A stretch of DNA of 63,881 nt, counting the filler, from Octopus bimaculoides (taxonomy: Eukaryota): the NCBI RefSeq assembly GCF_001194135.2. It is 9 parts of 8 records of this genome, joined end to end, with 100 filler letters (N's around TTAATTAATTAA, not from the genome) between each part and the next. Parts side by side here need not be neighbours in the genome. Positions count along the whole stretch, not along the records: positions 12,965 to 20,914 come from NC_069007.1; 8 more parts are not named here. One strand, written 5' to 3'. The position numbers and the translations under genes were made by a program. The notes below the pieces were generated by a model. It worked only from the letters and a program-made list of their open reading frames with translations, did no database searches and had not been told where the DNA came from. Of the stretch, positions 16,397 to 18,297 are shown piece by piece; positions within the stretch are counted from its first letter, which is position 1; every line of letters starts with the position of its first letter.

Positions 16397-18297
16397 GAAA
16401 TTCCAATGAGAAAGGCATTATGGAATTTCGACTTAGTTCTGGAAGATTTTCGAACGAAATATTAATCAGCGCCGTCCTGAAAGTGTATATAAAGACTAAA
16501 GGAAAAAGGCGGAAACGTCGGATCATTTTGCATGTATGTGAGAAAAACCAAGATGGCACCTTCTTCGAATTTGCGACAGTACGATTAAGAATAAAACAAA
16601 AAGGTTGGCAAGAAATTAATTTGCCGTTTTACTTGTTGAAAAAACTGAAACACGAACCAATTAAGTTACATGTGGAATGTGAAAAGTGCAATAGAAAAGT
16701 ACGTTTGATTTTGCCGAAACGCAGAAAATCGAATAAACCAAAGAAAATGCGTGCATTGATTCCTAATGGTAAACGTTCTCCCATGATAGTGATCAATACA
16801 CGCGAAAATCTGAAGCATCCCTTCCGCAAAAGGAACCGACGGGACATCACATTGCCAGCTGAACTTAATGATACGTTTGATGAAGAAGAAGATATTGTTG
16901 ATGGTTATGATAATGTATATAGGGTAAAATCAATTGAAGAGAAAAGCAAAGCCAACGGTAGTCGGAGTTATACAGTGCGAATGGAAAACAGAGAAGAGGA
17001 AGGAGAAGACGAAGAAGATAATGACAATGATAATGATAGTGGTGGTGATGATGAAGAAAGAGCATCAGGAAAAATGAACGATATGGATGTACAAGATGGT
17101 GGCGGCGACGGTGGCAACACAGACATCAATAGCGGCGGCGTCGGTGGTGGTTTCGGAGGAAATGGTAGACAACGAAACCTTAACCAATGGGAACACGACT
17201 ACGCTGACAGTGGTGGTGGTGGTGGTGGTGGTGGTGGCGGTGGTGAAAAAAACCTCGAAGTTATAAGTGAAGATAGTCGCCACTCGTCACCGTCCGAATC
17301 ATCGGAGGGAGCGACCTATAATGGCGATAGTGATGAACGCCAGTGCTGTTTGACTTCACGTTTCATCTCCTTTCGAAGCATAGGCTTACAACATCTGGTC
17401 GTGGAGCCGGACGCCGGTTTCGTAAGCAGCCATTGCTCCGAAGTCTGCCCTGGATCTTCTGCGCCCGTTAACGGCAGAAAAGGAAAACCTATCTCACGAA
17501 CTACCGTGCAGAACAGAATGCAAACCACTAATGAAAACAGAAGTAATAGCAGTAGTAGTAGTAGCCGCAGTAGTGGTAATAGTAAAATAAATAATAGAGA
17601 TGGTAGCAATGCTATTGATTGTAATAGCAGTAGCAGTACTAATAATAACAATCATAGTAATAATAATATTAGAAATGATAATAATAATTGCAGTAGCAGT
17701 AATAATAATAATAATAATAATAAGCATGCAGAAAGCAAGAGTCAGCATCAACAGCATCAGCACAGTCATCATTATCCACAGCACCACCACCACCACCACC
17801 ATCCCCACCACAACCACAACAACCTCCACCACCATCGGCACCCCCACCCCCAACAGCAACAACAACAACAGCATTACCAACACAGCAATCACAACCACAA
17901 CCACAAACACAACGTCAACACCACCACCACCAACAACAACAACAAACACCACCACCTTCCTCCTTCTTCTTCTTCTTCTCCGCTGCTCCCACTCCCTTCA
18001 AATCCACATCATGGCCATATTCATTTTAAACCGCAACAACAAGTACGAAGGGCAACTAACTCTAACCCTGCGCATACTCCGTGTGCGAAAGGCAGGAACT
18101 GTGAAAGACACACCACATCGCAAACACAGCCGAAAGCGGACAAAGCGGCGACGGCGAGACCAAGGCACATCAAACGCCCTTTAAGATGTCGCCCAACTGC
18201 TTTCAAAAACCTTACAATTGCTTTCCTAACAGAAGATCTCGAAATTGAAAATATGACAATTCCAAATGTTATTGTGACGAAATGCGGTTGCAGATGA
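16397..18297 (+). CDS. Terminal coding exon of a TGF-beta superfamily ligand (activin/inhibin-beta-like): C-terminal prodomain, furin site and an internally expanded cystine-knot domain; 5' exon(s) not found in window
   Basis: A T-rich acceptor (ttttttttttttgcAG, AG at 16395-16396, phase 1) opens a stop-free frame to TGA at 18295-18297. Prodomain-like motifs: LISAVLKVYI, KGWQEINL, LHVECEKC, PMIVIN. Furin site RKRNRR at 16825-16842. Knot N-half: CCLTSRFISFRSIGLQHLVVEPDAGFVSSHCSEVCP (17344-17451). C-half: CRPTAFKNLTIAFLTEDLEIENMTIPNVIVTKCGCR* (18187-18297). The subfamily call is an inference from the CC doublet and the CxxC prodomain motif. Confidence 0.9.
16825..16842 (+). other. Furin/proprotein convertase site (RKRNRR) separating prodomain and mature region
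   Basis: cgc aaa agg aac cga cgg, directly after a PMIVIN-type prodomain end, which is the usual position in TGF-beta precursors. Confidence 0.8.

What the first reader, a model, noticed from the sequence alone, without database searches (positions are those of the whole stretch)
17344..18291. Remodelled cysteine code: no interchain Cys, CxGxC changed to CxExC, one unpartnered Cys and four Cys in the insert
Seen: the usual CC before the C-terminal finger is RC (18184-18189); the ring motif is CSEVC; the N-terminal CC is present but there is no upstream Cys between the furin site and it; the insert adds four Cys (IDCN, NNCS, TPCAKGRNC). Established: the first Cys of the late CC forms the inter-subunit disulfide and is absent in GDF9, BMP15, GDF3 and Lefty. 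The Gly of CxGxC is highly conserved because of steric limits in the knot ring. In activins the second Cys of the early CC pairs with a Cys near the N-terminus. Inference: the protein is a monomer or non-covalent dimer, or it has rewired disulfides through the insert cysteines. Loss of the interchain Cys is also a feature of the Lefty-type antagonists.
Basis: partly seen in the sequence, partly recalled or inferred. Interest (0 to 1): 0.7.

Follow-up and report, generated by a model that had tools for sequence, protein, structure and literature searches.

The report
Octopus activin-like gene, altered cysteines
This is the last exon of an octopus growth-factor gene of the activin type. Its unusual cysteine pattern is real, is shared with a second octopus species and is kept by selection. 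Part of the pattern, the missing dimer-forming cysteine, is an old trait of a whole group of mollusc genes.

Summary

An independent Octopus vulgaris assembly carries all 11 cysteines and the Glu, so this is not an assembly error. The open reading frame is intact in both species. All nine indels are multiples of three. Amino-acid changes number 64, against about 100 expected if neutral, so this is not a pseudogene.

By mature domain and by prodomain, the protein is a divergent activin/inhibin-beta relative. It belongs to a mollusc-wide clade (chiton, abalone, Gigantopelta, cephalopods). Every full-length member of that clade already lacks the interchain cysteine, and the wrist length ranges from 11 to 318 residues.

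Three changes are cephalopod-specific:
- Gly replaced by Glu or Asp in the ring.
- Loss of the N-terminal cysteine.
- Loss of the two finger-1 tryptophans (also missing in abalone and in P0023).

A gastropod-like relative changed the ring Gly separately. The four insert cysteines occur only in Octopus and carry no statistical weight.

The protein is probably a ligand without the canonical interchain disulfide and without a wrist. Monomer, non-covalent dimer or rewired dimer all remain untested. With 11 cysteines, one must stay unpaired within a chain. I rate it a new variant of a known kind, of moderate interest.

The parts
16399..18297 (+). Last coding exon (632 codons plus stop) of a divergent activin/inhibin-beta-like TGF-beta family gene. 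It is preceded by a pyrimidine tract and an AG acceptor (...ttttttgcag|G) at 16380-16398.
   Evidence: ORF; acceptor sequence. Pfam TGF_beta scores 28.9-34.3 bits against a cut-off of 27. The orthologous intact ORF is in O. vulgaris at L001 81052-83163. Amino-acid changes are 64 against a null of 99.7, and all 9 indels are multiples of 3.
16399..16842 (+). C-terminal half of the prodomain. It contains the conserved CxxC (VECEKCN; Cys codons 16678-16680 and 16687-16689) and the RSPMIVINT motif, which corresponds to RPFL of activins.
   Evidence: The family profile aligns this region to the prodomain of pro-activin A (5HLY), E 7.7e-35. It is 96% identical to O. vulgaris, with dN/dS 0.08.
16498..16521 (+). 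Polybasic cluster KGKRRKRR inside the prodomain, conserved as a basic cluster across the whole mollusc family. It may be a second convertase site (inference).
   Evidence: Alignments.
16825..16842 (+). Furin-type cleavage motif RKRNRR, followed by D.
   Evidence: It aligns with RSKR, RTKR, RRKR and RQKR of relatives and with the cleavage region of pro-activin A.
16843..17343 (+). N-terminal extension of the mature region: 167 residues, acidic and Gly-rich (pI 4.1), with no cysteine. It includes a (GTG)12 repeat at 17210-17245.
   Evidence: A similarly acidic linker occurs in O. vulgaris (166 aa) and in P0003 (179 aa, pI 4.4).
17344..17448 (+). Finger 1, running from the early CC (17344-17349) to the ring motif C-S-E-V-C (17434-17448, Glu codon GAA at 17440-17442). 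The canonical WxxW is replaced by L..L (IGLQHLVVEP).
17449..18186 (+). Insert of 246 residues in the wrist position, rich in N, H, S and Q and basic (pI 11.3). It is largely built of trinucleotide repeats. It carries four Octopus-specific Cys codons at 17620, 17689, 18082 and 18100.
   Evidence: It is 318 residues in O. vulgaris and 169 in P0003, and open in frame in all three. It contains no GTRAG donor and no pyrimidine-rich acceptor.
18187..18291 (+). Finger 2. The single late Cys (18187-18189) is preceded by Arg at the place of the interchain Cys (18184-18186). Then come 31 residues and C-G-C (18283-18291). N-x-T sequons lie at 18208-18216 and 18250-18258.
   Evidence: The 31-residue spacing is invariant in all relatives. 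Identity to O. vulgaris is 97%, with fewer amino-acid changes than the null (P=0.006).
18295..18297 (+). Stop codon TGA, followed by a 3' flank rich in (TAA)n and (GAT)n repeats (18322-18496).

Best explanation
Shown:
- Window 16399-18297 is the last coding exon of a functional octopus gene for a divergent activin/inhibin-beta-type TGF-beta proprotein.
- It encodes the C-terminal half of an activin-like prodomain, a furin motif and a 167-residue acidic extension. Next come finger 1 (CC ... CSEVC), a 246-residue basic repeat-derived insert where the wrist helix should be, and finger 2 (single Cys ... CGC).
- All six cystine-knot cysteines are present, with canonical spacing in both fingers.
- The interchain Cys, the N-terminal partner Cys, the ring Gly and the two finger-1 Trp are absent.
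- The gene belongs to a mollusc-wide clade in which the interchain Cys is always absent and the wrist is hypervariable.

Inferred:
- After convertase cleavage, the C-terminal domain still forms the three knot disulfides. It cannot make the canonical interchain disulfide or the canonical wrist-to-palm dimer and type I receptor site.
- It therefore acts as a monomer or a non-canonical oligomer. A modulator or antagonist of activin-type signalling, or a matrix-bound factor held by its charged disordered segments, is more likely than a classical dimeric agonist.
- The second Cys of the early CC and the four insert cysteines make five extra cysteines, so at least one is unpaired within a chain.
For: - Domain and family. 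Pfam TGF_beta is above its cut-off. The best solved relatives are inhibin beta B and beta A, E 2e-8, with cysteines aligned as stated. The family profile matches pro-activin A including its prodomain, E 7.7e-35. The nearest named proteins outside the clade are Drosophila inhibin beta A (activin-beta) and Schistosoma activin-like proteins.
- Real and selected. The O. vulgaris orthologue has an intact ORF with identical cysteine states. dN/dS is 0.19 overall, 0.08 in the prodomain and 0.22-0.30 in the fingers. A composition-matched permutation gave 64 amino-acid changes against 99.7 expected. For CC-to-end the figures were 37 against 52.4. No simulation out of 5000 reached either observed value. 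98% of neutral simulations acquired a stop codon. All 9 coding indels are multiples of 3, against 9 of 31 in the 3' flank.
- Deep conservation of the fingers. Identity to the distant orthologue P0003 is 65% and 54% in the fingers, against 59% in the prodomain. Finger-2 spacing is invariant at 31 residues.
- Family context. The single late Cys occurs in Liolophura, Haliotis, Gigantopelta and four unnamed relatives. Wrist length ranges from 11 to 318 residues. The clade is monophyletic in 100% of NJ bootstraps.
- The insert is not an intron. No usable splice signals lie inside it, and it is open in frame in three lineages.
- Literature. Inhibin alpha became an antagonist through wrist deletion, and other invertebrate ligands lack the dimerisation Cys (PMC11239237).
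Against: - There are no transcript, protein or binding data, so secretion, cleavage, disulfide pairing and oligomeric state are all inferred.
- The only annotated model of the orthologue (O. vulgaris P0002) splices out the whole mature domain.
- Gastropods have prodomain-only paralogues.
- Between the two octopuses, the prodomain is more constrained than the fingers. Constraint on finger 1 alone is not significant (P=0.33), nor is that on the non-repetitive end of the insert (P=0.20).
- A Glu side chain in the eight-membered ring is expected to clash with the threading disulfide (PMC12203953), so the knot may not form as assumed.
- In two relatives with Asp at this position, the last knot Cys is also lost (CGY). 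This suggests erosion of the knot in this lineage.
- The AlphaFold model was poor (mean pLDDT 49.5) and the fold search found nothing significant.
- The odd cysteine count permits a non-canonical covalent dimer.
Confidence: 0.6

Rival explanations
1. The conserved function lies in the prodomain. The C-terminal growth-factor domain is a relaxed, slowly eroding appendage, and the odd cysteine pattern reflects weakened constraint on the knot rather than a new disulfide design.
For: - The prodomain is the most constrained part between the two octopuses: dN/dS 0.08 against 0.22-0.30, and 96% identity.
- Haliotis RefSeq proteins P0005, P0015, P0016 and P0017 end just after the RPFL motif, where relatives have their cleavage site. 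So do the unnamed P0006, P0008 and P0020.
- The annotated O. vulgaris model omits the mature domain.
- Knot elements were lost repeatedly in the clade. The ring Gly became Asp or Glu twice, the last Cys became Tyr twice, and both Trp were lost.
Against: - The fingers still show fewer amino-acid changes than neutral expectation. For CC-to-end, no simulation out of 5000 reached the observed value. For finger 2, P=0.006.
- At cephalopod depth the fingers are as conserved as the prodomain: 65% and 54% against 59%.
- All six knot cysteines and the exact 31-residue finger-2 spacing are retained in Octopus.
- The third exon of the O. vulgaris model is not conserved as coding in the window. It has an early stop, and its 85% amino-acid identity is close to the neutral level.
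Confidence: 0.2
2. A covalent dimer with rewired disulfides. The unpartnered second Cys of the early CC, or one of the insert cysteines, forms a new interchain bond that replaces the lost canonical one.
For: - The mature region has 11 cysteines in both octopuses and 7 in P0003. Both counts are odd, so one Cys per chain lacks an intrachain partner.
- The second Cys of the CC is retained although its usual N-terminal partner is gone.
Against: - The insert cysteines are absent from P0003. Their conservation between two close species is expected by chance.
- Nothing conserved across cephalopods marks a new dimer interface.
- The wrist helix that packs the two subunits is missing.
Confidence: 0.13
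3. The 246-residue insert is removed from the mRNA as an intron or 'exitron', so the secreted domain has a normal length.
For: - The insert is largely microsatellite-like DNA.
- Similar trinucleotide repeats occur in the 3' flank.
- Its length differs by 72 residues between the two octopuses.
Against: - There is no GTRAG donor at 17449-17900 and no acceptor with a pyrimidine-rich tract at 17900-18190.
- The frame stays open through the insert in three lineages, including the non-repetitive 169-residue insert of P0003.
- All indels are multiples of three.
- Amino-acid changes are fewer than the null, 27 against 36, P=0.002. Protein-guided alignment of repeats inflates this signal.
Confidence: 0.04
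4. A pseudogene or an assembly or sequencing artefact.
For: - A 10-N gap lies 45 bases upstream of the exon.
- The protein databases hold no full-length model of this gene: O. vulgaris has only a truncated one, and the only other match is the ORF of this window itself.
Against: - An independent assembly of another species has the same codons at every diagnostic position.
- The 632-704 codon ORF is intact in both species, whereas 98% of neutral simulations acquire a stop.
- There is a strong excess of synonymous changes.
Confidence: 0.02

Closest known systems
Activin / inhibin beta subunits (INHBA, INHBB; Drosophila activin-beta)
   Same: - They are the best sequence matches for the mature domain and for the prodomain: CxxC, a basic stretch and the RPFL-type motif before the furin site.
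- They share the early CC, all six knot cysteines and the finger spacing.
- The intron lies in the prodomain and the last exon carries the whole mature domain. Exon 1 was found 71 kb upstream in O. vulgaris. That INHBA has this layout is from my own knowledge.
   Different: The octopus protein has no interchain Cys, no N-terminal Cys, Glu instead of the ring Gly, and L..L instead of WxxW. It has no wrist helix and carries a 246-residue basic insert in its place. It also has a 167-residue acidic extension before the CC.
Mollusc 'inhibin beta A chain-like' RefSeq proteins (Liolophura sinensis XP_064614437, Haliotis rubra XP_046564311, Gigantopelta aegis XP_041367330)
   Same: They fall in the same clade, with 100% NJ bootstrap. 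They share the prodomain motifs, the single late Cys, the short or non-helical wrist and the 31-residue finger 2.
   Different: These proteins keep the N-terminal Cys and the CxGxC Gly. Liolophura and Gigantopelta also keep WxxW. None has the long acidic extension. Their wrists are 11-34 residues long.
Lefty
   Same: The architecture is similar: an early CC, no interchain Cys and no long wrist helix. Lefty acts as an antagonist rather than a receptor-activating dimer. This is from my own knowledge; the cysteine classes are described in PMC4564238.
   Different: Orthology was not tested, because no Lefty sequence was retrieved. By sequence, the octopus protein and its prodomain are activin-like. 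Lefty keeps the ring Gly and, per the scallop survey PMC10763453, appears only in deuterostomes.
GDF9 / BMP15 / GDF3
   Same: They lack the interchain Cys and work as non-covalent dimers (my own knowledge; PMC4564238).
   Different: They belong to the BMP-type branch without the early CC. They keep the ring Gly and a normal wrist.
[quoted passage not shown]
   Same: PMC11239237 proposes that wrist deletion directed inhibin alpha's shift from agonist to antagonist. The two invertebrate proteins lack the dimerisation Cys (PMC11239237).
   Different: They come from different lineages, and no relationship was tested here. Inhibin alpha still forms a covalent heterodimer with a beta subunit.

Membership tests
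TGF-beta superfamily ligand (Pfam PF00019) | Significant match to the TGF_beta domain model | tested here: met
   28.9 bits for the whole ORF and 34.3 bits for the mature region, against a cut-off of 27. E 2e-8 to inhibin beta B.
TGF-beta superfamily ligand (Pfam PF00019) | Six cystine-knot cysteines with canonical spacing (C ... CxxxC ... C ... CxC) | tested here: met
   All six align to the activin cysteines. The early CC is followed by 28 residues to the ring, and the late Cys by 31 residues to CGC.
TGF-beta superfamily ligand (Pfam PF00019) | Gly in the centre of the CxGxC ring | tested here: not met
   The codon is GAA (Glu) at 17440-17442, and also GAA in O. vulgaris. P0003 has GAC (Asp).
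TGF-beta superfamily ligand (Pfam PF00019) | Proprotein with a prodomain and a polybasic convertase site before the mature domain | tested here: met
   RKRNRR at 16825-16842 aligns with the family cleavage sites, and the prodomain aligns to pro-activin A.
TGF-beta superfamily ligand (Pfam PF00019) | Signal peptide and secretion | tested here: inconclusive
   Exon 1 is outside the window. In O. vulgaris, the frame upstream of the annotated exon 1 encodes a hydrophobic stretch (LFFPCVAILFLSC) and an alpha-1-like helix. No signal-peptide predictor was available.
Activin / inhibin beta subfamily | Closest similarity of both the mature domain and the prodomain to activin beta chains | tested here: met
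   Only pro-activin A (5HLY) is matched through its prodomain.
Activin / inhibin beta subfamily | Nine-cysteine pattern: N-terminal Cys, early CC, CxGxC, late CC and CxC | tested here: not met
   The early CC is present. The N-terminal Cys and the first Cys of the late CC are absent.
Activin / inhibin beta subfamily | Wrist helix of about 30-35 residues between CxGxC and the late CC, and the WxxW motif in finger 1 | tested here: not met
   The wrist position holds a 246-residue low-complexity insert. The AlphaFold model predicts no helix there, at low confidence. The finger-1 motif reads IGLQHLVVEP in place of IGWxDWI.
Mollusc activin-like clade without interchain Cys (unnamed; RefSeq 'inhibin beta A chain-like') | Shared prodomain block, single late Cys, variable wrist and monophyly | tested here: met
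   HMMER hits, alignments, and an NJ bootstrap of 100%. Only two outgroups were used, so the limits of the clade are provisional.
Lefty | Absence of the interchain Cys and of the long wrist helix | tested here: met
   These traits are analogous and are not diagnostic of orthology.
Lefty | Sequence clustering with deuterostome Lefty proteins | not tested
Named neighbours are activins. The scallop survey PMC10763453 says Lefty appears only in deuterostomes and found none in scallops.

The most novel reading that the evidence does not exclude
Molluscs, cephalopods most extremely, carry an undescribed class of activin-derived ligands that work without an interchain disulfide and without a wrist. 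These would act as monomeric antagonists or traps of activin/nodal-type signalling. That is the role Lefty plays in deuterostomes, and protostomes are thought to lack it. In cephalopods the knot ring tolerates an acidic residue, and the wrist has become a long charged disordered tether.
Probability: 0.15. Interest if true: 0.75.

Novelty: new variant of a known kind. Interest (0 to 1): 0.45.

Why it matters
- The central Gly of the knot ring is regarded as sterically required. Here a Glu sits at that position, with all six knot cysteines retained and the gene under purifying selection. This is a natural test of that rule.
- The clade shows that an activin-type gene can persist across molluscs without the interchain Cys, with a wrist ranging from 11 to 318 residues. 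That points to a non-canonical mode of action. It offers candidates for the missing protostome antagonists of activin/nodal signalling.
- The only public model of the gene (O. vulgaris) omits the growth-factor domain. Surveys of cephalopod TGF-beta ligands based on annotated proteins will therefore miss it.

Tried and rejected
- The first homologue search with the whole exon was swamped by low-complexity words and returned only the query itself.
- I tried to drop the low-complexity columns from the HMMER profile by aligning window pieces to the full protein. This failed, because all 625 positions were used. The search still found the family, but only 13 hits.
- The profile search of the word-indexed database added few members.
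- The first alignment for structure prediction misaligned finger 1 onto the insert cysteines and was discarded.
- The AlphaFold model from the corrected five-sequence alignment was poor: mean pLDDT 49.5, with only finger 2 reaching 71-82. Foldseek found nothing with E below 0.9. Structure gives no evidence on the Glu or on disulfide pairing.
- tblastn with N-terminal prodomains of relatives found no upstream exon in the window piece. In O. vulgaris, exon 1 lies about 71 kb upstream.
- The species behind P0003 (ENA ERZ21867824) and P0012 (Logan SRR33471226 and others) could not be identified. P0003 is called a cephalopod by inference only.
- The Logan contigs with P0012 have a stop upstream of the ORF. 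They look genomic and give no evidence of expression.
- I recalled the oyster gonadal TGF-beta (og-TGF-beta) as a possible relative. No sequence or description could be retrieved to test this.
- The NG86 dS of 0.25 exceeds the flanking non-coding distance of 0.10-0.13. I therefore rely on the permutation test rather than on the raw dN/dS.
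Full report
**What is in the window.** The piece 12965-20914 contains one long ORF on the + strand, 16294-18297. A pyrimidine tract and an AG acceptor end at 16398, so the coding exon most likely runs from 16399 to the TGA at 18295-18297. Its parts, in order:
- The C-terminal half of a TGF-beta-type prodomain, 16399-16842, with a CxxC at 16678-16689.
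- A furin-type motif RKRNRR at 16825-16842.
- A 167-residue acidic, Gly-rich stretch without cysteine, 16843-17343.
- Finger 1, from TGC TGT (CC, 17344-17349) to TGC TCC GAA GTC TGC (C-S-E-V-C, 17434-17448).
- A 246-residue stretch rich in N, H, S and Q, 17449-18186.
- Finger 2, from AGA TGT (R-C, 18184-18189) to TGC GGT TGC (18283-18291).

The codons were read directly. Pfam TGF_beta scores 28.9-34.3 bits against a cut-off of 27.

**Check of the observation.**
- In HMMER alignments to inhibin beta B and beta A (E 2e-8 and 1.4e-6), the early CC falls on the activin CC and CSEVC falls on CEGSC. The single late Cys falls on the second Cys of the activin CC, and CGC falls on CGC. The Cys that is missing is therefore the one that makes the interchain bond in activins.
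- No Cys lies between the furin motif and the CC.
- The four insert cysteines are at 17620, 17689, 18082 and 18100.
- The mature region holds 11 cysteines. Six belong to the knot. The other five are the second Cys of the CC and the four insert cysteines. Five is an odd number, so at least one is unpaired within a chain.

**Not an artefact and not a pseudogene.** A search with the low-complexity parts removed found one close relative. It is a 293-residue 'hypothetical predicted protein' of Octopus vulgaris (P0002) on chromosome record OX597840.1. The orthologous DNA is about 90-92% identical. It carries an intact 704-codon frame from the same acceptor to the same CGCR-TGA end.
- Diagnostic states. 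Every diagnostic state is the same: QCC, C-S-E-V-C with GAA, a non-Cys residue (Lys) before the late Cys, CGC, and the four insert cysteines.
- Substitutions. Nei-Gojobori dN/dS is 0.19 overall. By region it is 0.08 in the prodomain, 0.25 in the linker, 0.30 in finger 1, 0.19 in the insert and 0.22 in finger 2. dS (0.25) exceeds the non-coding distance of the flanks (0.10-0.13). I therefore also re-dealt the observed substitutions among sites of the same base. Observed amino-acid changes were 64, against 99.7 ± 5.1 expected. From the CC to the end they were 37, against 52.4. No simulation out of 5000 reached either observed value. 98% of simulations produced a stop codon.
- Indels. All nine coding indels are multiples of three, against 9 of 31 in the 3' flank. 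Trinucleotide repeats favour such indels in any case.
- Weaker points. Finger 1 alone (P=0.33) and the non-repetitive end of the insert (P=0.20) are not individually significant. The signal in the repetitive insert (P=0.002) is inflated by protein-guided alignment.

**The insert is coding, not an intron.**
- It has no GTRAG donor and no acceptor with a pyrimidine-rich tract.
- It is open in frame in three lineages.
- In the distant orthologue P0003 it is a non-repetitive 169-residue stretch.
- In the window it is largely trinucleotide repeats: AAT/TAA, CAC and AGC-type units. It is 72 residues longer in O. vulgaris, through poly-Asn expansion.

**Family.** An exhaustive HMMER search of 1.84 billion representatives gave 13 hits. 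Those with names are RefSeq 'inhibin beta A chain-like' proteins of a chiton (Liolophura sinensis), abalones (Haliotis) and the deep-sea snail Gigantopelta aegis.
- A profile of the family matches pro-activin A (5HLY) at E 7.7e-35. The match includes the prodomain blocks EIITFAE...LHFEIS, the CxxC and HRPFLML. Other pro-forms in the PDB match essentially only in the mature domain.
- Outside the clade, the nearest named proteins are Drosophila inhibin beta A (activin-beta) and Schistosoma activin-like proteins.
- In a neighbour-joining tree the mollusc proteins form one group (100% bootstrap). The two octopus sequences pair with P0003 (100%).
- P0003 sits on a 652-kb contig of an unnamed ENA assembly. 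It shares only about 67% nucleotide identity with octopus, and only in the prodomain block. It has the same architecture. I take it to be a distant cephalopod, but that is inference.

**Layers of change in the cysteine pattern**.
1. Family-wide and old. A single late Cys, preceded by R, K, L, I, Q, E or S, occurs in every full-length member. Wrist length runs 11, 18, 28, 29, 34, 84, 169, 246 and 318 residues, against 32-33 in canonical activins. Finger 2 is exactly 31 residues in all.
2. A derived subgroup (Haliotis P0026, P0023 and the cephalopods). The two finger-1 tryptophans are lost.
3. Cephalopods. The ring Gly is replaced by an acid, Glu in Octopus and Asp in P0003. The Cys just after the cleavage site is lost. 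The mature region has a long acidic N-terminal extension (pI 4.1-4.4) and a long basic insert (pI 10.5-11.3). The sequences of these two segments do not align, but their charge is conserved.
4. Octopus only. The four insert cysteines.

P0023, which groups with Haliotis (69% bootstrap), also has Asp in the ring (CVDDC). P0023 and P0003 both end in CGY, so the last knot Cys is lost; in P0003 the codon is TAT. The ring was therefore altered at least twice in this clade, and in two lineages it is broken. Octopus is the case in which the acid coexists with all four ring cysteines.

**How it probably works.** The shown parts are listed above. The inference is as follows. After secretion and convertase cleavage, the C-terminal domain keeps the finger scaffold and probably the three knot bonds. 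It cannot form the canonical interchain bond. It also lacks the wrist helix, which provides both the dimer packing surface and the type I receptor site, and it lacks the finger-1 tryptophans. A classical activin-type signalling dimer is therefore unlikely. More likely is a monomer or an unconventional oligomer acting as a modulator. The literature offers precedents:
- PMC11239237 proposes that inhibin alpha became an antagonist by wrist deletion.
- Lefty, GDF3 and GDF9/BMP15 form the class without that Cys (PMC4564238).

The ring Gly is held to avoid a clash with the threading disulfide (PMC12203953). How Glu is accommodated is unknown. The AlphaFold model was too poor to say: mean pLDDT 49.5, with four finger strands, no helix and a disordered insert. 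The fold search found nothing significant.

**Main rival.** The prodomain may carry the function.
- In favour: it is the most constrained part between the two octopuses. Haliotis and unnamed relatives have paralogues that end just after the RPFL motif, where relatives have their cleavage site. The O. vulgaris annotation joins the prodomain to a small downstream exon and skips the growth-factor domain.
- Against: that downstream exon has an earlier stop in the window and only neutral-level conservation. The donor it uses is weaker in the window. The fingers are as conserved as the prodomain at cephalopod depth, 65% and 54% against 59%.

**Gene structure.** In O. vulgaris, the reading frame upstream of the annotated first exon continues into a hydrophobic, signal-like segment. 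It then encodes a Cys pair and an alpha-1-like helix that resemble the N-termini of the gastropod and chiton proteins. It ends at a CCG|GTAAGT donor about 71 kb upstream of the exon studied here. The gene therefore has an upstream coding exon, with the intron in the prodomain, and a last exon carrying the whole mature domain. The upstream exon is outside the window piece.

**Comparison and novelty.** The protein is a member of the TGF-beta superfamily, although it fails the ring-Gly feature. By sequence it is an activin/inhibin-beta relative, but it fails three features of that subfamily: the nine-cysteine pattern, the wrist helix and WxxW. It resembles Lefty in architecture only. The scallop survey PMC10763453 says Lefty appears only in deuterostomes and found none in scallops. 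I found no paper that describes this mollusc clade or the cephalopod variant. The literature library is incomplete, and a possible link to the oyster and scallop gonadal TGF-beta genes could not be tested. I rate it a new variant of a known kind, interest 0.45. A specialist would find the combination unusual: an acidic ring residue, a wrist of 246-318 residues, and purifying selection. There are no functional data, and part of the 'remodelling' is an old family trait.

Noticed in passing
L001 (O. vulgaris OX597840.1) 10001-10102, 81052-81681, 83927-84073; window about 17037 and 18986-19105: The only public protein model of the orthologue (P0002, 293 aa) splices from inside the acidic linker to a small downstream exon and omits the whole growth-factor domain. 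The donor is G|GTGAGG in O. vulgaris but A|GTGGTG in the window. The downstream exon has an earlier stop in the window and only about 85% amino-acid identity.
   Followed up: partly
P0005, P0015, P0016, P0017 (Haliotis RefSeq, 257 aa); P0006; P0008 and P0020: Some paralogues of the family consist of the prodomain only. They end a few residues after the RPFL motif, where the others have their furin site. P0006 lists the same longest-contig length (804476) as the full-length P0010, so the two may lie on one contig; this was not checked.
   Followed up: partly
window 16843-17343 and 17449-18186; L002 (P0003): The charge pattern is conserved although the sequences do not align. The extension before the CC is acidic (pI 4.1-4.4, about 45 Asp+Glu). 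The wrist insert is basic (pI 10.5-11.3) in both octopuses and in the distant orthologue. In Octopus the insert also holds 38 His.
   Followed up: partly
window 16498-16521: A polybasic cluster KGKRRKRR inside the prodomain is conserved as a basic cluster in every family member. Pro-activin A has only a weakly basic stretch there. It may be a second convertase site.
   Followed up: no
window 18208-18216 and 18250-18258: Two N-x-T sequons (NLT, NMT) lie in finger 2, and NLT is about where the receptor-binding knuckle lies in canonical activins. Both are conserved in O. vulgaris but absent in P0003.
   Followed up: no
L002 7693-7710; L003 (P0012/P0023) C-terminus: Two relatives with Asp in the ring end in C-G-Y instead of C-x-C, so the last knot Cys is lost. 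The ENA gene call for P0003 read the TGA stop as Trp (…CGYVW).
   Followed up: yes
window 16345-16354: A run of 10 N (assembly gap) lies 45 bases upstream of the exon's acceptor. It does not touch the coding sequence.
   Followed up: no
window 18322-18496: The 3' flank just after the stop codon carries (TAA)n and (GAT)n trinucleotide arrays, of the same kind as those that make up part of the coding insert.
   Followed up: no
window 20465-20901: An AT-rich tandem array with a 33-base unit, 13.5 copies, 86% matches. Related sequence occurs at many places in the O. vulgaris locus.
   Followed up: no
window 13656-13872, 14195-14380, 14575-14692, 19625-19695: Two interspersed repeats have many copies, on both strands, in the O. 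vulgaris locus. There are also (GA)n and (AC)n microsatellites. The upstream intron is partly rearranged or inverted relative to O. vulgaris (window 13476-14403 aligns on the opposite strand).
   Followed up: no
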